The notes under the pieces are model-generated. The model was not told where the DNA came from and ran no database searches. It was given only the letters and a program-made list of their open reading frames with translations. From the NCBI RefSeq assembly GCF_035594765.1, contig NC_085843.1, forward strand, positions 67,316,201 through 67,380,200: a stretch of DNA of 64,000 nucleotides. Reading direction: 5' to 3'. The position numbers and the translations under genes were made by a program. Origin of the DNA: Anolis carolinensis. Taxonomy: Eukaryota. Shown here piece by piece: positions 4,921 to 63,899 of this stretch (the first letter of the stretch is position 1; each line of letters opens with the position of its first letter).

Positions 4921-5296
4921 ATGATATCAAAATTCAGCTGGGTCTTTGGAATAGTGTCATAATTCTGTGCATTCCCCATTAAAAGATAACATTCTGTAAT
5001 GGCATCATATACAATGTCATTGGCAGCTGGTAACTATTGTATTACTTTAAATGTCATATTTGACTTATCTTACAGCATAGATGGATAAATAGATTGATAG
5101 GTAGATAGAGAGATAGATATTGCTCTTTGGCAGCAGGTGTCCAAAACAGCTAATGTTTTTAAAAGGCAAGCTTCCACTTAAGCAAAAGGTCTATCCTTCT
5201 TTGTAATAACTTTACACATATTTATATAATGGAAGGAAAAAGGAAGAGAGGACGACCATGGGCAAGATGGATGGATGGTATCCTTGAAGTGAATGT

Positions 5297-5329
5297 GTTG
5301 TACTTGCGCCAAGGGGCAGTTCTGGTACT

Positions 5330-5361
<32 letters not shown>

Positions 5362-6111
5362 CAGTATTTATATTCCGCCCGTCTCAGCCCGAAGGGGACT
5401 CAGGGCGGATCACATTACACATATAAGGCAAACATTCAATGCCTTAACATAGAACAAAGACAAGACAAACACGGGGCTCCGAGCTGGCCTCGAACTCATG
5501 ACCTCCTGGTCAGAGTGATTCATTGCAGCTGGCTGCAGCTGCTTGCTCAACAGCCTGCGCCACAGCCCAGTAAAATTGCTAGTAGGAGGAAAAGGGATAA
5601 TGCTGAGCAGGTGTTTGATGAGGAACAGCAAGTAAAGCGGATTCGGGAAATACTTATGGCTCCTACTGATGAGGAGACGTTTGAAGGCTTCTCTAGTGAG
5701 GAGGACTCAATGGAGGAAGATGATGGGTTAACAGAAAGTAGAGGAACTAAGAGGTCAACTCGGGAGCAAGAGTCAGATGAGGAAAGGGAAAGAAAGAAGA
5801 TTCGTGATATACTTACTGCTCCCACGGAAGATGAAACGTTTGAAGGTTTTTCTGGGGATGATGGGTCTGAGAGTGGGATGGAAGATGCTGCAGATTGGAC
5901 TCAAGTAAATGTGTGTGCAGCACCAGATTCTGAGGGTGCATCGGGAGACTAGCATGCTACTGGTACACCAGAGACATGGGGAGATCTAAATCTTGAACAA
6001 AGATGGCGTGATTGGAGGGCTGGTGGGCGAGGTTCACATATGAGATCAAGATCAGCTGTGGATAATGATAACAGGGCGGAGGCCTCATCATCATCAGACT
6101 CCGAGGTGTAA
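5297..6111 (+). pseudogene. LTR(U3)-encoded acidic ORF with two FxGF motifs, disrupted by a SINE and one TAG (5950-5952)
   Basis: VVLAPRGSSGT / SKIASRRKR..IREILMAPTDEETFEGF..IRDILTAPTEDETFEGF..TWGDLNLEQRWRDWR..MRSRSAVD..SDSEV*; colinear with copy 2. Confidence 0.8.
5331..5568 (-). mobile_element. Anolis SINE2-type SINE (tRNA-like head, L2-like tail), short variant
   Basis: Reverse complement matches the head (gggctgtggcgcaggctgttgagc) and the tail (gtgatccgccctgagtccccttcggg...aatataaatactgtaaataaa) of the copy at 11447-11909. Confidence 0.85.
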
Positions 6112-6259
6112 GTTAAAAGTGGAATTGAAAGTGAAGGTCCCTTGCAGAAGGCAAGGTGTCGTTTTTGGGACATTGCTTTTCGCTGCCTGTTCTCCTTGGG
6201 TCATGGCTGTACAGTTTCATGTTCTGAATCCGGATTGATTCCTGCTTTGGTGTTCTTGA

Positions 6260-6595
6260 CTTGGCATTTCTGGCTTGCCGTTCCTGGCTTCTGAATCCAG
6301 TTTGGCTCCTGACGACAGCGTTCGTTCCTGCTTTGGCGTCCCTGGCTTGGCATTTCTGGCTCCTGAATCCAGTTTGGCTCCTGACGACAGCATTCGTTCC
6401 TGGCTTGGCGTTCCTGGCTCCTGAATCCAGTTTGGCTCCTGACGACAGCGTTTTGCTCCTGGCTTGGCGATTCCAACTTGGTGTTTCTGGCTTCCACTGG
6501 CTCCTGAATCCGGTCTGCTTCCTGACGACAACAGTGTTTGCTCCTGGCTTGGCATTTTTGGCACCTTTTGGCTTTTGAACTTGGCTTGGCTTTTG
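6260..6595. repeat. Imperfect tandem repeats inside LTR A copy 1 (core ggctcctgaatccagtttggctcctgacgacagc)
   Basis: About four copies with variable spacers, directly visible. Confidence 0.85.
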
Positions 6596-7704
6596 GCAAC
6601 GGTATCATTTGCACTCATTATTTAAGAGCGTTTGGCGCTTCCCTGACTCTGTGCCACAGCATAGCGTGGCGCTTGTTTCAGTGAATGTTTTAGTTACATT
6701 TGAACCGGATTATCAAGCTACATAATCTGGGTTATCTTTCTGATCCTGTTTTGTGCCTTTTCTTGAAGCAAAGATGTTTACTTTTGGTGGAAACACTGAA
6801 GTTAAGTGTTTATGAGTTCTATTTATCATTTAATAAACATTTGCTGACTTTATTTATTGTGTGTGGCTCTTTAAGAGGAGTCTGTATCGTGATAGAATGG
6901 CTTCACCTTGAAGGAGCTGGGGATGGCGACGGCCGACAGGGAACTCTGGCATGGACTGGACCATGAGGTCACAAAGAGTCGAAAACGACTGAGTGAATGA
7001 AGAGAGCTATATGGGATTCAATACATATAGCAATTGTTTTTGTTTAGACCTGCATGACTAATTTCCAGGTTCCTAGAAAAATGTGCTTGATTGTGACTGA
7101 ATAGTGTTCTCTGAAGTTGAAAAATAGTAATTCTCTGAATTCTCGGCCTTCATTTATCACTCTTATCTGCTTTACTACACTTTTCAAAATGTTCATTCTC
7201 AAATTTACCTTTCTATAGTGACTAACAGCTAGTAGAATTTAGATTTTTATTTCTAAAGGGTACCCTTTATGTTGATTGTATCTTCCTAAGAGATCCCAGT
7301 GAAATGCCACTGAAGAGATTTACCCTGAGGTTGCCTTAGAGTAATTTATGTGATTTATTTTGCACAACTTAGCAATAATCATTAAAGTTCATTAGATTAG
7401 AGGGAGAATCATTGTCACACTGTCATCCGGATGCATGGGCTAATTTCAGTGGTGATGCTTAGTGTTTTAATTATGCAAACCTCCCCACTCCTTTACATCC
7501 CACACTTCTAATGAACTGCTCAAAGGAGCTTGAAAACTCAACAATTTTACGTTACACAATGGATTTTATGCATATATTTGTGTGAAAGAAAGGGAGAGTA
7601 TACAGGCATTGTTACATACAGCAGACTGTTAATAGTCTGAACTGGTCCCAGTTCATCAGTTTGGGCCATAGTAACAAGAGTTTCAATGTATAGTTACCAT
7701 GTAG

Positions 7705-8296
7705 GGCTGTGTGGGTTCTATTTTACATAAGCACGGCTGCAAGATTAACATTGTCAAAAGTATGGAAAGGGAAGGAAATCCCTACCATGGAAGACTGGGT
7801 ACTGAAAGTATTGGATATAATACAAATGGATATCCTAACTCAAAAGATAAAAGAAGGGAAAAACAGAATGGACTGGTCCAGTTTCATAAAATTTATTTAA
7901 AAAAAAAAAGGAATGGATTTTAAGATAGATCTGACTCATATATAAAGAAACTCTTTTTTGGACTACTTTTTTGGAATCCTGGGTAGAGAGAGATCTGGAA
8001 AATAAGAATCTCCAAAGAATGAAAGAAGAAATCCTAAAGTGCTGATGGGAAGTCTTCCTCTGTTTTTTTTTGGGGGGGGGAGGGGGAGAGGGGGTTGTCG
8101 TTTTTTTTGTTTTTTGGGGTTTTTTGTGGGGTTTTTCTGTTGTCCCTCTCTCTCCCCCACTCACCCACCTCCTACTACCCCAAACTTTCCCAATTCAAAC
8201 GATCTTATTCTCCAACTGTGTCTTTATCCCTTTCTAATTATTCCCTCATATAGCTGTATTTATGATTCACAAAAGAAATAAAATTATTTACAAAAA
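7705..8296 (+). mobile_element. L1 3' end fragment
   Basis: TAARLTLSKVWKGKEIPTMEDW...DWSSFIKFI is an L1 ORF2 C-terminus; G-rich then pyrimidine-rich UTR; AATAAA plus A-rich end. Confidence 0.8.
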
Positions 8297-9119
8297 CATA
8301 AGAATCAAATGCACTGTTGAAGGATTACTTTATCAGTGGAATTATGGCTAATAAAATTTGATGATTGATGAGATGTGGTGTAGGAAATAAATAAATAATA
8401 GTCAGGTATCCTAAAAACAGCATTTTTATAAGATACATAAAGTTGTTGTACAGCTTTATTTGGCATTGATACAGCCTACTTTGGCTCTGGGCATCACCAG
8501 GACAAGCTGATACTATATTCACAGCTCATACAGTCACAGCACCACTCTGCTTGGCACTGTATGATCCCCAAGTATAATGTTGTGTAAGAAACACTACAAG
8601 CCATGCTAGATACTAAAATCTGGAAACCAATAATGATGTGGAGCCCTTTCATATTACACAGTTATAGCAGCATGATGTCACTTTAACTGCGATGGCTAAA
8701 TCCCATAGAATCCTGGGGTTTGCAGATAAGAGCTCTCTGGATGACAGTTGTATAACCTTCGAATTCTTGGATTCTATAAGATGTCACGACTGGACTTATC
8801 GTCAGGGGAAACCCTTTTTTTTTTATAAGATGTATACGTGACAGTTAATGTAGAGAGTGCTGTAGGTGCTATAGTTTTTCAGGTGCTTTTTTGATATCAA
8901 ATGTAGTGATGGCAACCCAAGGGAGAGAGGATTCCTCCCCCCCCCCGCTCATTTCTTTTAGTGTGGATTAGCAGTAGGGACTCCCTTGCATTTGAGGGAG
9001 TCTCAATAAGGACACCAGTTGGGGCTGATCCAACATCAGGCATGTTGGATCAGGCCCTGATTATGGGTCTGTATAGAAGAACCCTCTTGCTGATGTAAAA
9101 ACTGTATGAAGGACTAGAA

Positions 9120-9680
9120 TAGTTATTATTATTATTATCTTTATTTTTATCCATCTTTTCTCCCACTATAGGAACTAAAGGCAGCTTACAATAAATATAA
9201 ATCAGTACTAAAACAGTATAAATACATTAAAATATAAAATAAAATTAAAAATATTTAAATCATTTATTTAATTAAAATAATAAAATACATTAAAACTCAA
9301 TCCCCAGCACCAAATCCTAGTCATACTGTTCCCTGATGCCCACCTATCATTTGTTCATAAATGCCCAATGACAGTGGAATGTTTTCATCTGCCTCTGAAA
9401 GACAAGCAAGGACAACCATCCTGCGTCTCTTTAGTGTCAGGAAGTAGCCACCAAAAAGGTCCTCTACCTTGTTCCCAGAAAACAAAATTGAGAGGGTGGT
9501 GGGTCAGAGAGAAGGCCTTATCCAGATGGCCTTAGCGTTCTGATAGGTACATCAGAGAGACGTGGTCCTTCAAATAACCTAGACCCTATATAAGGCTTTA
9601 CAAGTGAAAATCAGCACTTGGAATTTCACCCTGAAATGGGTAGGTAGCTAATGCAGCTGTTGCGATGGGAATAAATAAAG
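9120..9680 (-). mobile_element. Old L2 3' end remnant
   Basis: (TTA)n and AT-rich tail followed by reverse-complement L2 3' sequence (gccaccaaaaaggtcct..., gagaaggcct..., cagcacttggaatt). Confidence 0.6.
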
Positions 9681-9834
9681 GGTGGCAGACTGAGGGCCCA
9701 TCCAGACAGGCCTTTAAAACAAGACCTGTTTCACTTTTACTAGAGGCATCCAAAAGACACTTCTGGTAAAACTGAATTAATTTGGATTAAACCAGGATTT
9801 CCCTAGTTTGATCCAAATTAATTAGACACCCCAT

Positions 9835-10125
9835 TAGATCTGGGCCTTCCTGACTAACATTTATAAAGCTCCTTAAACTCTTCCTGCTCAAGAAAGCCTT
9901 TGTGGGATGCTATGCAATGATGCTAAATGGTTAGGAAGACCTATAGGTTTGTTTTGTACGATTGGGTTAGTATAATTTCTTGTATTGAACTTTGATTAGC
10001 ATTTACAGCATGTCTAATATTTATGGTTTTAACTTGGTTTTAACTTTTACATTGTATGTTTTATTGGCTGTAAGCCGCCTTGAATGGGGAAAGGCAGGAT
10101 ATACATTTCTTAAATAAATAAATAA
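9835..10125 (+). mobile_element. L2 3' tail remnant
   Basis: ctgtaagccgccttga...ggcaggatata...(TAAA)n. Confidence 0.6.
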
Positions 10126-10801
10126 GGTGCACAATATTGCAGACTTGATATCACAATTCTCATGCAACATGTCTTCTCCATCTCACATCTCCATAATTTT
10201 AAATTGCACACAGAGAAAATTAAAACCATTCTTATTGTATTATGCTTAAGGATGAGGGCAATAGCAAATACCGAGAAAGGCTAAACAACATTCTTTTTTG
10301 AATAAATATCTCTAATGGTTATTTGCTGTAGTGGACCAGGTATATAAAACATGATTAAATCTTGTGTTTTATTGATGTATTGTAGATGGAGGGAAAGTTA
10401 ATGGTGTAGTTAGCCTGAGTCCTCTTGCCTTTCTTTTCTCATTTTCTAAGCTGCAGTGCCATAACCTTTAGCTAATAACAGCAACTCCCTACTGAGTGTG
10501 CATTAAATTGAACAGATGAATGGCAGCATTTTAAAGCAGATCTGATAACCTAGGCATGCTTGAGGGGTTTAAAGAGGCCACGTTCAATAGAGAAAACTAC
10601 TGGACACTTGAGGTTTGTCATATTATTCTGGTAGAAAAAAAGGAAAAAGACATTTAAAAATCAATTGCACCATTGAGAATATGAAGAAGGAAAACCAAAT
10701 AGGGAAGAAGGTGCATGATATGCTATGAAAGAAAACAGCTAGCACAGAAACAAAAAGCCTTAATGGAAGGCATGATATTTGAAGCACTCCTTTTGCATGG
10801 T

Positions 10802-10846
<45 letters not shown>
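10802..10846. repeat. (TCTA)n microsatellite at an L2 tail
   Basis: Direct observation. Confidence 0.95.
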
Positions 10847-10978
10847 TTCCATCATTTCTACCCCACCCTTCTCACCCGAGGGGACTCAGGGCAGCTTACA
10901 AACTGGCAATTAATGCCGATACACCATAATACAATAAAATAAAACATTAAAACAGTTAAAACAGTGTAATATACAATA

Positions 10979-11279
10979 GGTAAAGGTAAAGGTTTCCCCT
11001 GATGTTAAGTCCAGTCGTGACCGACTCTGGGGGTTGGTGCTCATCTTCATTTCTAAGCCAAAGAGCTGGCATTATCCATAAACACCTCCAAGGTCATGTG
11101 GCTGGCATGACTGCATGGAATGCCGTTACCTTCCCGCCGAAGCGGTACCTATTGATCTACTCACATTTGCATGTTTTCGAACTGCTAGGTTGGCAGGAGC
11201 TGGGGCTAACAGTGGGTGCTCATTCCGCTCCCGGGATTTGAACCAGTTCAGCAGCTCAGTGCTTTAACAGGGGCCCCTA
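10979..11279 (-). mobile_element. Sauria SINE
   Basis: ggtaaaggtaaaggtttcccct tail, gcggtacctattgatctactcacatttgcatg core, tRNA-like head; 12-bp TSD TAATATACAATA (10967-10978, 11280-11291). Confidence 0.9.
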
Positions 11280-11446
11280 TAATATACAATATACAAAGTT
11301 TAAAACAGTGCAAAGTGCATATGCCATTCGTCCACCAGACCTTGTACAAAAGCCTTATTCCAAACCAAGTCGAAGCCAGTAAAAACTTATTATTTAAACG
11401 CTTGCGCGCATAGCCAGCTGTTCAGTTTCTTTTTGAACCCCAGAAG

Positions 11447-11909
11447 GGCCGGGCTGTGGCGCAGGCTGTTGAGCAGCTGCAATAAATCACTCTGACCATG
11501 AGGTCATGAGTTCGAGGCCAGCCCGTGGCGGGCTGAGCACCCGTCAATTAAGAATAAAAAATAGCCCCTGCTCGTTGCTGACCTGGCAACCCGAAAGATA
11601 GTTGCATCTATCAAGTAGGAAATAAGGTACCACTTATAAAAAAGTGGGGAGGCAAGTTTAACTAATTTATGGCCTGGAATGAGGAACTGCCTTCAGAGTG
11701 GATGATGAAGCAGCTGCTCCCCCCTGTGGCCAGAATCGAACATCTCCTCAGGAAAAGGTTAAATTGCCTCTGCGTCTGTCTGTCTCGGTCTCTGTTTGAT
11801 GTGTTTATGGGCATTGTGTGTTTGCCCTATGTGTGATCCGCCCTGAGTCCCCTTCGGGGTGAGAAGGGCGGAATATAAATACTGTAAATAAATAAATAAA
11901 TAAAATAAA
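11447..11909 (+). mobile_element. Anolis SINE2-type SINE, full length
   Basis: Pol III-like head (tgtggcgcagg...gagttcgaggcc), L2-like 3' end, (TAAA)n tail. Confidence 0.9.
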
Positions 11910-55734: not shown

Positions 55735-57780
55735 GATGCCCTCTCCAACCCCGCCGAAATTGGTCTCCTTGGTTCACTGAGGAACTTTGACCGATGAAGC
55801 GGGAAAAGAGACAGCTAAAGGGCGTGTGGCGACAACTCCGTGACAGAGAATTGAGATCAGCTTACAGGGCATTTATGGAGTCCTATGAGCATGCTATCAT
55901 CGAAGCAAAGCGAGTATATTATGCTTCACTAGCTCACGCCTGGCAAAATTGTTCAAAATAATTCGATCTCTAACGACGGTCCCTACTGTCCCAAAAAATG
56001 ATTATCAGGTTCTTTAAGCCAAGGCCTTTCAGAGCTATTTTGCAGACAAGATCTCGCTACTACGCCAGGACCTCCCCGCCACAATTGATACAATGAGAGA
56101 ACTTGAGACTCTGTGGCCACTTGCTGGGCCCACCCTTGATCGGTTCATCCTGCTGGATGCAGAGGCTGTTGATAGGCTTATAGCTGCAGCTAGACCGACC
56201 ACTTGCTCCCTCGATCCATGTCCCTCTTGGTTAGTGAAATCCTGCTTGGAGGGATTATGCAACCCTCTGTTGAAGATAATAAACAGCTCCCTTGAGCAAG
56301 GAGTTTTTCCAGAGGGTTTAAAAAAGGCTGTTGTCTCTGCCCTGCTGAAGAAACCAGATCTAGATCGCTCGATTCCCTCCAGCTACCGCCCAGTTTCGAA
56401 TCTTTCGTTTCTGAGCAAGATGATTGAGAGGGCAGTAGCGGAGCAGTTGCAGCAGTTCCTAGACGACACAGTTGGACTGGATCCCTTCCAGTCCAGCTTC
56501 CGTGTGGGGCACGGGACTGAGACAGTGTTGGTCTCAATCACAGATCATCTTTGATGCCAGCTCGACCAGGGCGGATTGGCGCTGCTTGTGTTATTGGATC
56601 TCACAGCAGTATTTGACACAGTTGATTATAATCTTTTGACCCACCGCCTGGCCGTTGTTGGAGTCAGGGGGACAGCTTTAAATTGGCTGACCTCCTTCCT
56701 TCAAAACCATGGACAGCAAGTGGAGAGGGGAGGCCTGGTCTCTGAAAGGTACTCTCTATTTTGTGGGGTTCCTCAGGGGGCCATCCTCTCCCCTCTGCTG
56801 TTTAACATCTATATGCAACCACTTGCTCAGCTGGTTCGAGATTTCGGGCTTGAGTGCTACCAGTACACTGATGACACTCAGCTTGTGTTGAAGATGGAAG
56901 GCCGACCAGACTCTGTACCCAATAACTTTCATCAATGTCTCGAGGCCGTTACTGGATGACTACGTGCCAGCAGGTTGAGGGTGAATCCAGCAAAGACAGA
57001 GATCTTATGGCTGGGCCGACCGGGCAATGGGGATATCCAGTTGCCTACCCTGGATGGTGAGGCACTATGCCCGTCATCACTGGTAAGGAGTCTGGGAGTC
57101 CTTTTGGACCCTTTGTTGACAATGGAGGCCCAGGTCTCCACCATTGGCAGTACCGCCTTTTTTCATCTGCAGCAGGTTAGACGGCTGGCCCCCTATCTGT
57201 CTAGAGACAACCTAGCCACAGTGATCCAGGCCATGGCCATCTCAAGACTGGACTACTGTAACACCCTCTACATTGGCCTTCCTCTGTCGGTGATCCAGAA
57301 GCTCAAGTTGGTACAAAATGCAGTGGCTCGGCTTCTTGCAGGAGTCCCGTTGAGATGCCACATAACACCAATCTTATTACCACTGGTTACCAATTGAGCA
57401 CCAGATCGCCTTCAAAGTGATGGTACTTACCTTTAAGGCCTTACATGGTCTGGGGCCGATGTACCTGAGGGACCATCTCACCCCCTACTAACCCCAGAGA
57501 TCCCTCCGTTCTGAGGACCAAGACATATTGGTTCCTAGTTTTAAGATCTTGTGCCTAACATCAACTAGACGCAGAGCCTTTACAGCAGTGGCACCATCAC
57601 TTTGGAACACACTGCCACCTGAAGTTTGTGCCTTGTGGGACATATCAGTCTTCCGCAGGGCATGTAAGACACACCTGTTTTGGCAGGCTTTTGATTTCTG
57701 TTATTACTGTTTTTAAATTGTTTTAGATTTTACTATGTTTTGGCAGCCCTAGGGGAGTGGCGGCATATAAGTTCGAAGAA

Positions 57781-57815: not shown

Positions 57816-60800
57816 AATGTAGAGGAAAACAAACCCTGGTAATGGCTGAGAAAGAGCATATGATGCAGCAAGTACAGCTGCACTCAGCCCCATTGCCCCC
57901 ACAGAGAGATTGCTTGCTTCAACCTGGAAAAAATTATCAGGATATACTAATGAAACTAACAAATATTTCTGGAATTTTGTGTGTGAAGCTGTTTTGCTTC
58001 ATTTGGGCTGGTGTTTGTGTGTGTGTGTGTGTGTGTGTAGAGGGGGCGCGCATTTTTTTTGGCAGTTCATATCTACAAATTGCCAAATTTGTCTGAAATC
58101 TGAATCAGACATGCAAAGTTTTGCACAGTATTAAATACCCTCTGGCTCCACCCTATCATGTGCAGTGTCTTAGCACACAGAGCCTCATGCAAACATCTCT
58201 GTTCTCTATCCCGCTATCCCAGTGCCATTTAATACACACCTTCCTCTGTTCAATTTGCAAGTACAGAAAGGTGTTAATGAAGGAGGCAGAAATGTTTTTC
58301 CAGATCACTCAGGCCACTGGCAAAGATACAATGAACTGGGCATAGTTTCTCATACATTTTAAATGTCCCATATAATTATAACTAGAACTGTGTCACTAAT
58401 TTTCTATCATTTTTTCTATTTCCAAGCTGGGGGAACAATGTTTCAATGGGAAGGGCCAAAAATAATTGAACTGTAAATTAACTTGGTTAACTACTAAACA
58501 ATATATAGCCTCATTGGGCTATTTGTTGCTTCTGTTCCACAAAGACACCAGGATACTGCATGTAGCTTTTAGATATCTCCATTTGTTTTAAGATTAAGAC
58601 CAGATCTACTAAATTTATTGTGGATATATGAATAATGTGTTTCACAGACTGAAAAATTACACAAATTGAATTAAGTGTGTTGTAGCCAACAGCAACTGAA
58701 ATTAAAATATACACTTATTGTCTATGCTAAGGATTTAAAAAGGGTCCCAGTTTGAGAAGTTCCCTAGTGGGAAAATCTCTTATGATTAATTTGAATGCCT
58801 AAAGTAAACAACTAAAGCCACAGTGGAGCAACTGTCAGCTTAGCTACCAGTGTAACAAAGGAATGATATGCTGTCAACAACTTATTTATAGAGCAGAGGA
58901 TTTAAAAAATGTGTAAATATTACAATAATGTCAAGTGAAGCTTCCACTTGCCATGCTGATATGCCTTTGTAAAATGCATTGGGAATCGAAGTCTACATTT
59001 TGCTTGAAGCATCACAGATTAGATGGGTTACAAATATGCATAACATTTAGCATAGGAATGGCTCTCAAAGATCTAACTACCACCCTTTAAGTTTTATGCA
59101 TATCAGTTATCCTCTGTTATTCCTTGTTCTTCATGATCCCTATAAAATCATTGCTAGCAATTTAGTTAACCAATTGTAAGTTTCTACGAGTCATACAGTG
59201 TGGGGTGGAGAAAACCTTACCTGGCTTTGAGCAATCAGCAATGCTAATCCTGCATTGAAGACAGGAGAATGAGTTGTGATGCCCTAATCAGACAGTGACA
59301 TGGGGCAGGCATGACATAAGTATGTACATTGCCAGTAACTCTCACATGTAGTATAACGGCATCTTGCTTCTGGTCTCCTTCCTACAGAGATGATCATAGT
59401 GAGTGCTGACATCATGTGTCCAGGGATTCTAGTGATAGGAATCATTGCAACATTTAGAAAAGTGCATATTTTGAATATTAATTGAGTTTCCTTTCATATA
59501 TTGATTCAAAAGTGCATAATTATGTGAATTATTAGTAATAGTTTATAGCAAACAATGAAGTGAATTCATTTCTCCACATTCCTCTCTACTACATGTTCCA
59601 GTCCTAAGTCTATGGGCACATCTACATTAACCACTTAAGTGTGTTTCAAACAGATATTGAAGAAAGTGGTTTTGCTGTGCAGATGACTGTCAGAGTTTGG
59701 AAGTAACTGGCATATATAAAATCGTAAATTGCTGGATCATTCAGACCTAGCCACATAATGAAATGCTGTGCCACTCAGGCCTAGGCCTAGTCATTTAGTA
59801 AAGCGCTGTGTCACCATGATTAGTGGCTGAAGCAACGGAGGAGGTATAAAAGCAAGTATTTCCCATGTGCTCAATGATGATGGGCAGATGATGGAGAACT
59901 GTGAGAGTAGTTGATGAATATAGAGCTAGAAAGTGTGTTTTGTATATATCTGTACACATCTTCTGCAACTATTGAAGATAAAGCCTACCTGCATAAGGAA
60001 AGAACAACTGTGTTTGTAGTCTGTGTTGTTCTTGCAGTGCCATTCATACACCACACAGAGGGAGCTTGGATTCTAACTAGATTGGGGCTTGGAGACACTT
60101 CCAGCACTCTATTAAGGCCTTGGAAATATCTGACAATGACTACATCTAAAATACTGGAACCAGTTTGAGTCTCGTATGGCAATTACACAAGCCACACAGC
60201 ACTGACATTCATTAAGGGCTTTCTTTTACATGCTTTTGTGGAAGTTCCTGATTAAATGATCAATGTAGGGCCTTTAATTCAGAATATATGGGATAGAGAA
60301 GAATTCTGGGTTGTTTTCTTTTTCCCATGAAATTGTCTGATTCCTCATTTCTGAACCAACATGAGAATAGACAAATAAAAGGTCCTTCAAAATTCACCGC
60401 TTTGTGCATTTTATTAGATTTTCCTGTACAGTGGAGTAAAAAGCCTGCAGAACTTTGCCAAGAATATAATCAATTTTAACAGAAACTAATTAAATATATA
60501 AATAACACTGTTACTTTGAAAATCCACCATAGATACCATAAATAATTTCCAATACCTTCACTAGAAGTCTTTTTGTTATCACCCTACTCTATTTAAACTG
60601 TTCAGCAGATAACTATGTTTTGCTATTGCTCAATTTTTGCTTCTTCCCATCTGTTTATATTTTACACCTTTGGTGCTTTGTCACTTCTTCTCCTCCGCTT
60701 GTGTTCCTTTCATTTCTCCGGTTTTCAACAAATCTTTCTCCTTTCTTTCACTAACTGAACAGGTGGCAAGCCAGCTGGTAGTAGAATGAAAAATTAAAAG

Positions 60801-62500: not shown

Positions 62501-62677
62501 TGTATATATAAGGGCTTTCTTTTACATGCTTTTGTGGAAGTTCCTGATTAAATGATCAATGTAGGGCCTTTAATTCAGAATATATGGGATAGAGAAGAAT
62601 TCTATATATATATACTTTTTAATAGTAGCATCAGCAAGATATTGGTCAATGTTATATATTGGACTGAAGTAGCTCAT

Positions 62678-63253
62678 GTTGTAGTTGGGCCAAGGGGCAG
62701 TAATGGTTCTATGGGTGAAACAGCTAGAAGGAGAAAAAGGGCTAATAGAGAGCAGGTGCTTGATGAAGAATAACAAGTAAAGCGGGTCCGGGAAATACTT
62801 ATGGCTCCTTCAGAGGATGAGACGTTTTATGGGTTTTCTAGTGATGAGGAGTCCATACTAGATGATGATGATTTCACAGAGAGTAGAGGAACTAAAAGGT
62901 CTACTCGAGAGCAGGAGTCGGATGAGGAAAGAGAAAGGAAAAAGATCCGGGATATACTCACTGCTCCCACTGATGAGGAGACTTTCAAGGGGTTCTCTGG
63001 GAATGATGGGTCTGGGAGTGAGATGGAGAATGCTGATTGGACACAAGTAAATGTAGATGATGAGCCAGTTCATGGGGCTGCATCAGGAGTTTGGCAAGCC
63101 TCTCATACTTCTGGGACATGGGGAGATCTAAATCTTGAACGGAGATGGAGGGACTGGAGGGATGAGAGGCAAGGTCCACTAACAAGATCAAGATCAGCTG
63201 TGATTGATGAGGAAAGGGCGGAGGTCTCATCAGCATCGGACTCCGATGAGTAA
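62678..63253 (+). pseudogene. LTR(U3)-encoded acidic ORF with two FxGF motifs; one premature TAA (62771-62773), 62801-63253 still open
   Basis: VVVGPRGSNGSMGETARRRKR..VREILMAPSEDETFYGF..IRDILTAPTDEETFKGF..TWGDLNLERRWRDWR..LTRSRSAVID..SDSDE*. Confidence 0.82.
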
Positions 63254-63431
63254 GTTAAAAGTAGAGTTTAGAGAACTATTGCCTTGCAGAAGGCAAGGTG
63301 TCGTTTTGGGGACATTGCTTTGTCGCTGCCTGTTCTCCTTGGGTCCTGGCTGTACAGCTTCCTGATAATCCGGATTGAATCCTGCTTCAGTGTTCCTGGC
63401 TTCTGACTCCAGTTCGGCTCCTGACAACGCC

Positions 63432-63710
63432 GTTTTCAGTTTGGCGTTTCTTTTGGCTTTCCTGCTTCGATATTTCCAGTTTGGCGTTTGCTTTGGCGTT
63501 CTTGCTCCAGCGTTTCCAGTTTGGCGTTTGCCTTTGCGTTTCTGCTCCAGCGTTTCCAATTTGGCATTTGCCTTGGCGTTCCTTCTCCAGCGCTTCCAGT
63601 TTGGAGTTTGCCTTGGTGTTTCTACTCCAGCGTTTCCAGTTTGGCGTTTGCCTTGGCGTTCCTGCTCCAGCGTTTCCAGTTCGGCGTTTGCCTTGGCGTT
63701 CCTGCTTTGG
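63432..63710. repeat. 39-bp tandem repeat in LTR A copy 2 (ccagtttggcgtttgccttggcgttcctgctccagcgttt)
   Basis: About seven copies, directly visible. Confidence 0.9.
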
Positions 63711-63899
63711 CATCCCTGCTTTGGCACTTCTAAGTTAAGTGTTTCTGAGTTTAAAATATCATTTAATAAACATTTAAGAACTTTCCTTAATGTGTGTGGC
63801 TTTTTAAGAGCTGTATCACGACAGCTCACCTTTTTTCTTTGGCTCAGCACTAAGATTACCTTATGTGTAGTGTGTCACAAAACTGCGATCTGCAGAGGA

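What the first reader, a model, noticed from the sequence alone, without database searches (positions are those of the whole stretch)
62678..63253. LTR-encoded protein with two tandem LEDGF/TND-binding-like (FxGF) motifs: a candidate retrotransposon chromatin-tethering module
Seen: the U3 part of solo LTR family A encodes about 190 aa with a basic patch (RRRKR) and two copies, 53 codons apart, of helix-AP-acidic-FxGF. Copy 2 has VREILMAPSEDETFYGF (62786-62836) and IRDILTAPTDEETFKGF (62945-62995). Copy 1 has IREILMAPTDEETFEGF (5641-5691) and IRDILTAPTEDETFEGF (5800-5850). Established: a short amphipathic helix, an acidic CK2-phosphorylatable linker and FxGF form the IBM/TIM motif. JPO2/CDCA7L, PogZ, IWS1, MLL1 and MED1 use it to bind the LEDGF/p75 and HRP-2 integrase-binding domain and related TFIIS N-terminal domains. 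From memory, the JPO2 motif reads roughly VADIFNAPSDDEEFVGF, which parallels these down to the AP dipeptide. Lentiviral integrase uses the same host domain through a different interface. Inference: this element mimics the host motif, bivalently, to reach transcribed chromatin or elongation factors, either to target integration or to support its own transcription. I know of no description of this in LTR retrotransposons but cannot search the literature.
Basis: partly seen in the sequence, partly recalled or inferred. Interest (0 to 1): 0.92.

Follow-up and report, generated by a model that had tools for sequence, protein, structure and literature searches.

The report
Retrotransposon integrase tail mimicking LEDGF-binding motif
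Two dead solo LTRs of a lizard Ty3/gypsy retrotransposon preserve the end of its integrase gene, a disordered tail with two selected copies of the peptide that the host protein JPO2 uses to dock onto the chromatin tether LEDGF. The element may therefore steer its insertions as HIV does, but by mimicry; binding is untested.

Summary
Two solo LTRs (5296-6894 and 62677-63823; TG..CA ends, 5-bp target duplications) share a 191-codon frame. It holds a basic patch and two helix/AP/acidic/ExFxGF motifs at exactly the stated coordinates.

The frame is a relic of real coding sequence. dN/dS between the copies is 0.31 overall and 0.08 in the motif blocks, and 0 of 500 neutral simulations reached 0.31.

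A profile built only from the LTR motifs, searched against all PDB sequences, gave one significant hit. It was the solved LEDGF/p75 IBD-JPO2 motif 1 fusion (6EMO, E 1.5e-4).

In a sister family in Anolis carolinensis (loci L002 and L003) the homologous tail is the last 139 codons of a 1201-aa Pol. It follows the integrase SH3 domain and reads across the polypurine tract into the 3' LTR in the same phase as here. No full-length element of the two-motif family itself was seen.

Related families carry 1, 2 or 3 motifs.

Binding to LEDGF/HRP2 and any effect on integration sites are untested. No TND sequence was available, so no co-fold was run. I found no paper describing this.

The scan has noted the same motif in LTRs and integrase tails on other pieces of this genome.

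The parts
62677..63823 (+). Solo LTR, copy 2 (1147 bp), TGTTGTA...CACGACA
   Evidence: Flanked by identical 5-bp target duplications GCTCA at 62672-62676 and 63824-63828. About 80% identical to copy 1. Multi-copy family in four public runs.
62678..63253 (+). Relic of the LTR-borne end of pol: 191-codon integrase-tail frame with terminal stop at 63251-63253. Broken by one in-frame stop at 62771-62773.
   Evidence: Translation. dN/dS 0.31 against copy 1. The stop at 62771 is absent from copy 1 and from nearly all family contigs laid there. BLASTP E 2e-10 to the LTR-borne Pol tail of L003.
62726..62740 (+). Basic patch RRRKR (NLS-like by inference)
   Evidence: RRKR in copy 1. GRRGRK/GKRGRK at the matching place in L001-L003.
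62786..62836 (+). IBM/TIM-like motif 1 (VREILMAPSEDETFYGF)
   Evidence: Matches ExFxGF with an 8-residue acidic S/T linker. Compared with the bulk of the family, only a synonymous change and the x of FxGF differ.
62945..62995 (+). IBM/TIM-like motif 2 (IRDILTAPTDEETFKGF), the best conserved block of the tail
   Evidence: AF2 predicts a helix over residues 50-63 of the 159-aa piece, ending at the DIL just before the linker. Invariant E-R-E-R-K, D-I, A-P, F, G-F across five family members.
63119..63163 (+). Second conserved block WGDLNLERRWRDWRD (predicted helix, function unknown)
   Evidence: Conserved in copy 1, P0001, P0002 and L001-L003. AF2 helix over residues 121-132.
63431..63706 (+). 40-bp x 6.9 tandem array in non-coding U3
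   Evidence: TRF. Copy 1 has a different 58/72-bp array at 6252-6474.
63765..63770 (+). AATAAA poly(A) signal near the LTR 3' end. It sets the LTR orientation, so the frame is sense.
   Evidence: Conserved in copy 1 at 6832.
5296..6894 (+). Solo LTR, copy 1 (1599 bp including a SINE inserted at about 5330-5566), inside a BovB-like LINE tail
   Evidence: Target duplication GAATG at 5291-5295 and 6895-6899. The host LINE reading frame resumes across the insertion (read directly).
5578..6111 (+). Copy 1 tail frame relic (in-frame stop at 5950-5952, terminal stop at 6109-6111)
5641..5691 (+). Copy 1 motif 1 (IREILMAPTDEETFEGF)
5800..5850 (+). Copy 1 motif 2 (IRDILTAPTEDETFEGF)

Best explanation
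The frame in the U3 part of both solo LTRs is the fossil of the last roughly 191 codons of pol of a Ty3/gypsy retrotransposon of the green anole.

In the living element, Pol (protease, RT, RNase H, integrase) does not stop before the 3' LTR. It reads across the polypurine tract into U3, so the integrase ends in an LTR-encoded, acidic, disordered tail. The tail carries a basic NLS-like patch, two copies of a short helix plus CK2-type acidic linker plus ExFxGF, and a Trp-rich helix. The ExFxGF unit has the architecture, and nearly the sequence, of JPO2/CDCA7L motif 1, which binds the LEDGF/p75 integrase-binding domain.

Proposed mechanism: the tail docks the integrase or intasome, bivalently, onto the IBD/TND of LEDGF and/or HRP2. 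These proteins read H3K36me2/3, so new copies would be biased into transcribed chromatin. The tail would stand where chromoviruses carry a chromodomain.

Shown here: the LTR anatomy, purifying selection focused on the motifs, the specific match to the solved JPO2-LEDGF motif, and integrase-to-LTR continuity in a homologous family.

Inferred: the same continuity for this two-motif family, binding to LEDGF/HRP2, and any targeting effect. The two window copies themselves are dead relics.
For: LTR ends and 5-bp target duplications.

Selection between the two copies:
- dN/dS is 0.31 overall, 0.08 in the motif blocks and 0.47 elsewhere.
- Differences by codon position are 24/27/64.
- 0 of 500 neutral simulations reached 0.31.
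- Where copy 2 differs from the family bulk, 11 of 21 codons change synonymously. Inside the motifs only synonymous sites and the x of FxGF differ.

Match to known motifs:
- A profile of 9 LTR motif instances against 177,635 PDB sequences gave one significant hit, 6emo_A, the LEDGF/p75 IBD-JPO2 M1 fusion, at E 1.5e-4.
- The published IBM core (S/E)xFxGF and the TIM features (helix, 8-16 residue acidic S/T linker, FxGF essential for LEDGF/HRP2) are all met at sequence level.
- AF2 gives a disordered chain with a helix ending right before the motif 2 linker.

Link to integrase:
- L003 is a full-length element with 99.7% identical LTRs and target duplication ATGTG. Its 1201-aa Pol has PR, RT, RNase H, Integrase_H2C2, rve and SH3_Tf2-1 (residues 976-1032). 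Its last 139 codons lie in the 3' LTR, with a purine tract just upstream.
- That tail matches the window tail at BLASTP E 2e-10.
- LTR base 1 is a third codon position in the window copies and in L001, L002 and L003 alike.
- dN/dS of the sister tails is 0.14-0.17.
Against: - No binding datum and no co-fold. No TND/IBD sequence could be obtained by reference.
- No full-length element of the two-motif family itself was seen. The integrase link rests on a sister family with no detectable nucleotide similarity to this LTR and 49% identity over 41 residues.
- The PDB match rests on 19 residues. Other solved IBM/TIM chains did not reach E 10.
- Expression could not be judged. The runs labelled RNA were guesses, and their depth profiles looked like the one run labelled DNA (also a guess).
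- Insertion-site preference is unknown. The copies whose target could be read lie in other repeats (BovB, CR1).
Confidence: 0.55

Rival explanations
1. The tail is an integrase tail, but its motifs act through a different partner or step. Candidates are another TND (IWS1, TFIIS, Elongin A, MED26, PPP1R10), or recruitment of elongation factors to boost the element's own transcription rather than to choose integration sites.
For: TIMs are a general code read by several TNDs, and multi-TIM proteins assemble elongation complexes. The tail has a second conserved helix of unknown partner.
Against: All known LEDGF/HRP2 partners have the FxGF part, and it is essential there, whereas many other TIMs lack it. 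The only PDB hit is the LEDGF-bound JPO2 motif. The position at the integrase C-terminus is where other elements carry targeting modules.
Confidence: 0.15
2. The conserved peptide serves a function unrelated to TNDs, for example CK2-regulated nuclear import, integrase stability or particle assembly. Its likeness to JPO2 would then be convergence on an acidic, aromatic motif.
For: Selection proves function, not partner. The match covers only 19 residues. No structure or assay exists.
Against: The likeness goes beyond the required positions. It shares the helix register, the A-P dipeptide, an 8-residue linker, E-x-F-x-G-F, and acidic S-rich residues after the motif. It was also the single significant hit in the whole PDB.
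Confidence: 0.18
3. In this family the U3 frame is a separate accessory gene, like MMTV sag or foamy-virus bet, expressed from a spliced or internal transcript.
For: Copy 2 has an in-frame ATG at codon 12 and another at the start of motif 1. Gene predictors have called such ORFs (P0001).
Against: The frame is open from LTR base 2 in all lineages, and no ATG is conserved between copy 2 and L001-L003. The homologous tail is contiguous with integrase in L002 and L003. The phase relative to the LTR start is identical.
Confidence: 0.07
4. The frame is a chance open frame, or a passively carried host exon (CDCA7L) with no function in the element.
For: The likeness to JPO2 M1 could reflect capture of a host exon. 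Origin was not testable here.
Against: dN/dS is 0.08 in the motifs, the frame is kept at about 80% nucleotide identity, and it is conserved in five diverged family members with 1-3 motif copies. Capture would explain origin, not lack of function.
Confidence: 0.03

Closest known systems
JPO2/CDCA7L IBD-binding motif 1 (solved with LEDGF/p75 IBD, PDB 6EMO); the IBM/TIM class generally
   Same: Short hydrophobic helix (I/V-x-x-I-L/F), x-A-P-S/T-acidic linker of 8 residues, E-x-F-x-G-F, acidic S-rich residues after it, a disordered context, and more than one motif per protein. It was the only significant PDB hit of the LTR motif profile. The features match the published definitions.
   Different: Here it is carried by a retrotransposon integrase tail encoded in an LTR, not by a host transcription factor. 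There is no similarity outside the motif. Binding is untested. Whether it arose by capture or by convergence is unknown.
Plant CRM group A chromoviruses (CR motif)
   Same: [quoted passage not shown]
   Different: Different host kingdom and a different motif. The CR motif has no known partner and is linked to centromeres. Here the module is a recognisable host SLiM pointing to H3K36me3 readers.
Lentiviral integrase - LEDGF/p75 (and HRP2)
   Same: The same host domain (IBD/TND) is proposed as the tether, and the expected outcome is the same: integration in transcribed gene bodies (section on viral mimicry).
   Different: From established knowledge, lentiviral IN binds through its folded catalytic-core dimer interface and N-terminal domain, not through an IBM-like linear motif. 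Here the host's own linear motif is copied.
Integrase SLiMs of gamma- and deltaretroviruses (MLV IN C-terminal tail with the BET ET domain; HTLV-1 IN LxxIxE with PP2A-B56)
   Same: A short linear motif in a disordered integrase segment copies a host ligand to recruit a host factor (HTLV/B56: papers listed; MLV/BET from my own knowledge).
   Different: Different motif and different host partner. Those motifs are not LTR-encoded and not tandemly multiplied.
Chromodomain of chromoviruses; Ty5 targeting domain with Sir4
   Same: A C-terminal integrase module that tethers to a chromatin feature (chromodomain: background; Ty5 from my own knowledge).
   Different: No chromodomain is detectable in the L003 Pol or in the window tail. 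The predicted target is active rather than silent chromatin.

Membership tests
IBM/TIM (LEDGF/HRP2 IBD-binding, TND-interacting motif) | Core (S/E)-x-F-x-G-F | tested here: met
   All four window instances read E-T-F-x-G-F. The definition comes from PMC7337902.
IBM/TIM (LEDGF/HRP2 IBD-binding, TND-interacting motif) | Acidic linker of 8-16 residues rich in D/E and S/T (CK2-type sites) between helix and FxGF | tested here: met
   The linker is x-A-P-S/T-(D/E)3-T, 8 residues, with S/T followed by an acidic residue at +3. The feature is as described in PMC9987994. Phosphorylation itself was not tested.
IBM/TIM (LEDGF/HRP2 IBD-binding, TND-interacting motif) | Short alpha-helix with aliphatic/aromatic anchor residues N-terminal of the linker, in an otherwise disordered region | tested here: inconclusive
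   AF2 (5-sequence alignment, mean pLDDT 57) predicts a helix over residues 50-63 ending at the DIL before motif 2, with local pLDDT up to 86. Motif 1 sat at the N-terminal edge of the folded piece and was not predicted helical.
IBM/TIM (LEDGF/HRP2 IBD-binding, TND-interacting motif) | Sequence likeness to a motif solved in complex with the IBD | tested here: met
   The profile of 9 LTR motif instances against the PDB gave 6emo_A (LEDGF/p75 IBD-JPO2 M1) at E 1.5e-4. The next hit was at E 0.14 and unrelated.
IBM/TIM (LEDGF/HRP2 IBD-binding, TND-interacting motif) | F-to-A-sensitive physical binding to the IBD/TND | not testable with these tools
   No IBD/TND sequence was available by reference for complex prediction. 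A wet assay is needed.
Ty3/gypsy LTR retrotransposon (LTR) | TG..CA termini, short target-site duplication, poly(A) signal near the 3' end, multi-copy | tested here: met
   TGTTGTA..GACA ends, 5-bp duplications on both window copies, and AATAAA at 63765 and 6832. Contigs of many diverged copies lie on it in four public runs.
Ty3/gypsy LTR retrotransposon (LTR) | Internal gag and pol with PR-RT-RNase H-IN order | tested here: inconclusive
   Absent from the window, where both copies are solo LTRs. Present in the sister family: L003 has gag (Retrotrans_gag, Ty3_capsid) and a 1201-aa Pol with PR, RT, RNase H, H2C2, rve and SH3_Tf2-1.
LTR-encoded integrase C-terminal extension (as in CRM group A) | The pol frame runs uninterrupted from the integrase across the PPT into the 3' LTR | tested here: inconclusive
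   Met in L003 (ORF 7181-10786, LTR from 10369) and in L002/P0004. For the window's family it is only inferred, from tail homology (E 2e-10), the same phase, and a frame open from LTR base 2.
Chromovirus | Chromodomain at the integrase C-terminus | tested here: not met
   No chromo-domain hit in the window tails, their relatives or the L003 Pol.
Stand-alone U3 accessory gene (MMTV sag-like) | Own conserved start codon or splice acceptor inside or just before U3 | tested here: not met
   No ATG is conserved among copy 2 and L001-L003. The frame is open from LTR base 2. Splicing was not testable.

The most novel reading that the evidence does not exclude
A vertebrate Ty3/gypsy lineage that has no chromodomain instead carries, inside its LTR, a host-derived or host-mimicking JPO2-type LEDGF/HRP2-binding motif in 1 to 3 tandem copies. 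It uses the motif to tether its integrase to H3K36me3-marked transcribed chromatin. That would be an independent, mechanistically different invention of the lentiviral LEDGF strategy. Sister families may swap in other chromatin SLiMs, such as the HMGN-like RRSARL tails noted elsewhere in this genome, which would make the LTR-borne tail a plug-in targeting cassette.
Probability: 0.45. Interest if true: 0.85.

Novelty: new variant of a known kind. Interest (0 to 1): 0.72.

Why it matters
Where mobile elements insert shapes both their own survival and host genome evolution. Known tethers are few: chromodomain to H3K9me, Ty1 to Pol III, Ty5 to Sir4, MLV to BET and lentivirus to LEDGF.

A retrotransposon that copies the host's own LEDGF/HRP2 ligand would be a new solution aimed at the same host hub as HIV, reached through the cellular binding groove rather than the lentiviral interface. 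It gives a directly testable prediction: FxGF-dependent, CK2-enhanced binding, and gene-body bias of young insertions. It offers a natural series of 1, 2 and 3 motifs for studying avidity. It would also show that LTR U3 can act as an exchangeable coding cassette for integrase targeting peptides in animals, as was seen before only for plant centromeric elements.

Tried and rejected
- **Pfam on the tails and relatives:** nothing above noise.
- **phmmer of the whole 159-aa tail against the PDB:** only a spurious acidic match to a plastid protein, E 0.022.
- **HMMER against 1.84 billion representatives:** only three short gene models, P0001-P0003, and no Pol.
- **Word-indexed searches:** the single tail, and P0002 region 1-153, added nothing. 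Only the profile search found the integrase-linked P0004 and P0005.
- **Exact look-up:** P0001 is not on record. P0003 gave only a 1.1-kb solo-LTR contig inside a CR1.
- **Other collections:** the metagenome scan found no relative. The ESM Atlas gave no usable hit. The findings search by sequence was blank.
- **Laid contigs:**
  - They showed a multi-copy family and that copy 2's stop is private.
  - They gave no upstream letters at the LTR start.
  - They gave no usable evidence of transcription, because the "RNA" labels were guesses and the profiles resembled the run labelled DNA (also a guess).
- **PDB chain retrieval:** a PDB chain cannot be fetched as a protein id. No TND partner was therefore available, and complex prediction was not run.
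- **Papers:** the three primary IBM/TIM papers are not held. Definitions were taken from PMC9987994 and PMC7337902.
- **blastn of the window LTR against L002 and L003:** no nucleotide similarity.
- **Rejected readings:** a host gene exon (target duplications, multi-copy), a gag start (the frame ends 570 bp before the LTR end, and U3 is not in the 5' transcript), and a chance ORF.

Full report
**Observation**

The window holds two copies of one LTR family on the + strand. Copy 2 runs from 62677 to 63823 and is flanked by GCTCA on both sides. Copy 1 runs from 5296 to 6894 and is flanked by GAATG on both sides. Copy 1 lies inside the 3' end of a BovB-like LINE, whose reading frame resumes after the insertion, and is itself split by a SINE at about 5330-5566.

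Both copies begin TGTTGTA and end GA(C/T)A. Both carry AATAAA about 60 bp before their 3' end. They are about 80% identical over the alignable part.

The four motif strings are at exactly the coordinates given. A strict pattern finds only these four places in the six-frame translation of the window, and none in 50 shuffles.

The frame 62678-63253 has 191 codons, starts at the second base of the LTR, and ends at a stop shared with copy 1. Each copy has one further in-frame stop, at a different place.

**Is it coding?**

Yes, in the ancestors of these copies.

- The two copies differ at 115 aligned positions of the frame, distributed 24/27/64 over the codon positions.
- Nei-Gojobori dN/dS is 0.31 (dS 0.55, dN 0.17).
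- In 500 simulations of the same number of random changes the ratio averaged 0.84 and never fell below 0.35. On average 5.3 stops arose, against 2 observed.
The two helix-plus-motif blocks (44 codons) have 17 synonymous and 9 non-synonymous differences (ratio 0.08). The rest of the frame has ratio 0.47.

Contigs of four public runs of the same organism laid on copy 2 show many diverged copies of the family.

- The in-frame stop of copy 2 is not shared by the bulk of the family.
- Of the 21 best-supported codons where copy 2 departs from the bulk, 11 are synonymous.
- Inside the motifs, the departures are synonymous or fall on the x of FxGF.

**What the frame belongs to**

U3 is transcribed only at the 3' end of the element's RNA. 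The frame is open from LTR base 2, and there is no ATG conserved among lineages. This suggested the tail of an upstream gene.

Single-sequence searches found only short gene models that start at internal methionines (P0001, P0002, P0003). A profile of five tails then found two Anolis carolinensis proteins, P0004 and P0005. Each has a Tf2-1-type integrase SH3 domain (Pfam E 8e-17 and 4e-18), and the tail with one motif follows it.

Their loci in assembly GCA_035594765.1 are full-length elements.

- L003 has LTRs at 5181-6322 and 10368-11509 that are 99.7% identical, with target duplication ATGTG.
- L002 has LTRs that are 99.1% identical, with target duplication GTATG. It carries about 1.9 kb of extra sequence between the RNase H and integrase parts.

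In L003, a gag ORF (Retrotrans_gag, Ty3_capsid) is followed by one 1201-aa ORF. Its domains are protease, RT, RNase H, Integrase_H2C2, rve and SH3_Tf2-1 at residues 976-1032. The 3' LTR starts at 10369, right after a purine run. The last 139 codons of Pol are therefore LTR-encoded.

The first LTR base is the third base of a codon in L001, L002, L003 and in both window copies. The LTRs start alike: TGTT(G/A)T.. then TTG.GCC.

The L003 tail matches the window tail at BLASTP E 2e-10, with 49% identity over the 41 residues around the motif. The sister tails are themselves under selection (dN/dS 0.14-0.17, against 0.03 for the integrase proper).

I conclude that the window frame is the relic of an integrase tail. 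I did not see a full-length element of the two-motif family itself, so this step is inference by homology.

**Family variation**

- The sister family has a 138-codon tail with one motif.
- The window family has 191 codons, that is 138 plus 53. The two motif units are 53 codons apart. They resemble each other at nucleotide level (62909-62998 against 5605-5694, 77%) and in their lead-in (basic, REQ, acidic, K-K/R-I/V-R-D/E-I-L).
- P0001 and P0002 have a third, more degenerate motif between the DWTxV and WGDL blocks.

Across all members, three blocks are best conserved: the E-R-E-R-K..D-I..A-P..F.G-F block, DWTxV, and a Trp-rich block (WG.L.L..RW..WRD).

**The motif compared with the known class**

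A profile built only from nine LTR motif instances (A1) was searched against all 177,635 distinct PDB sequences. The single significant hit was 6emo_A, the LEDGF/p75 IBD-JPO2 M1 fusion, at E 1.5e-4. It aligns to KEVADIFNAPSDDEEFVGF. The next hit was at E 0.14 and unrelated.

The published definitions are met at sequence level:

- The IBM core is (S/E)xFxGF, and either F-to-A change abolishes binding (PMC7337902).
- TIMs consist of an anchoring helix, an 8-16 residue acidic linker rich in S/T that CK2 phosphorylates, and an FxGF. The FxGF is essential for all known LEDGF/HRP2 partners. JPO2 has two such motifs and IWS1 three (PMC9987994).

AlphaFold2 on the five-sequence alignment gives a mostly disordered chain (mean pLDDT 57) with two helices. 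One ends at the D-I-L just before the motif 2 linker. The other covers the Trp-rich block. Pfam finds no domain, and no chromodomain is present in the tail or in the L003 Pol.

**Mechanism and rivals**

The best-supported reading is that the integrase tail docks, bivalently, onto the IBD/TND of LEDGF and/or HRP2 and so tethers integration to H3K36me2/3-marked transcribed chromatin.

Rivals:

- Another TND, or a role in the element's transcription.
- An unrelated function of a selected acidic peptide.
- A separate U3 gene in this family.
- No function.

The last is contradicted. The third is made unlikely. The first two can only be separated by binding tests.

**Comparison with what is known, and novelty**

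An integrase frame that extends into the 3' LTR and encodes the putative targeting domain is known from plant CRM group A elements (PMC3059260). Linear-motif mimicry by integrases is known for HTLV-1 (B56; one search list) and, from my own knowledge, for MLV (BET ET domain). LEDGF/HRP2 tethering is known for lentiviruses, through a folded interface.

Six full-text searches combined LEDGF, FxGF, TND or TIM terms with retrotransposon, gypsy, LTR or transposon terms. None found a paper describing an IBM/TIM in a retrotransposon. A further search on Anolis gypsy integrases and chromodomains found none either. I rate this a new variant of a known kind.

The scan's earlier notes on other pieces of this genome report the same motif in LTRs and in a gypsy integrase tail. 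I used them as leads and tested the integrase link myself on L002 and L003.

**Limits and omissions**

The majority lines that the alignment tool prints were not used.
- The laid runs were contigs with guessed library types, so nothing can be said about expression.

Noticed in passing
window:63119-63163 and 5977-6021: A second conserved block of the tail, WGDLNLE.RWRDWR., is kept in all family members and predicted helical (pLDDT about 78). No known motif was assigned. It may be a second docking site.
   Followed up: partly
window:63431-63706 and 6252-6474: The non-coding U3 downstream of the frame holds tandem arrays that differ between the two copies: 40 bp x 6.9 in copy 2 and 58/72-bp units in copy 1. 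They may be enhancer-like repeats that turn over quickly.
   Followed up: partly
window:62167-62511: A 345-bp element with perfect 35-bp terminal inverted repeats (MITE-like) sits just upstream of LTR copy 2. It is 93% identical to 33058-33382. In the laid runs this stretch has summed contig depths in the millions, so it is an extremely abundant repeat.
   Followed up: partly
window:62509-62603 and 60213-60307: A 95-bp stretch is repeated with 100% identity 2.3 kb apart, next to the MITE-like element. Its origin, whether a local duplication or an assembly effect, was not examined.
   Followed up: no
window:5330-5566: A SINE-like insertion with a (TTAT)n end splits the start of LTR copy 1, removing the stretch between codon 11 of the tail and the basic patch.
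   Followed up: partly
window:32290-32883: An ORF with a Pif1 2B-domain hit (E 5e-14), probably a Helitron helicase fragment. CR1/LINE reverse-transcriptase fragments lie at 1503-2339 and 56093-56554.
   Followed up: no
window:24565-35581: The scan's note s1-545985 reports two other solo LTR families in this window with a colinear peptide ending in an HMGN-like RRSAR(I/L) motif. Together with the present finding, this hints that anole gypsy LTRs carry exchangeable chromatin-binding tail peptides.
   Followed up: no
L002:7472-9241: The L002 element is about 1.9 kb longer than L003. It has a 540-aa ORF on the opposite strand between the RNase H and integrase parts, probably a nested insertion.
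   Followed up: no
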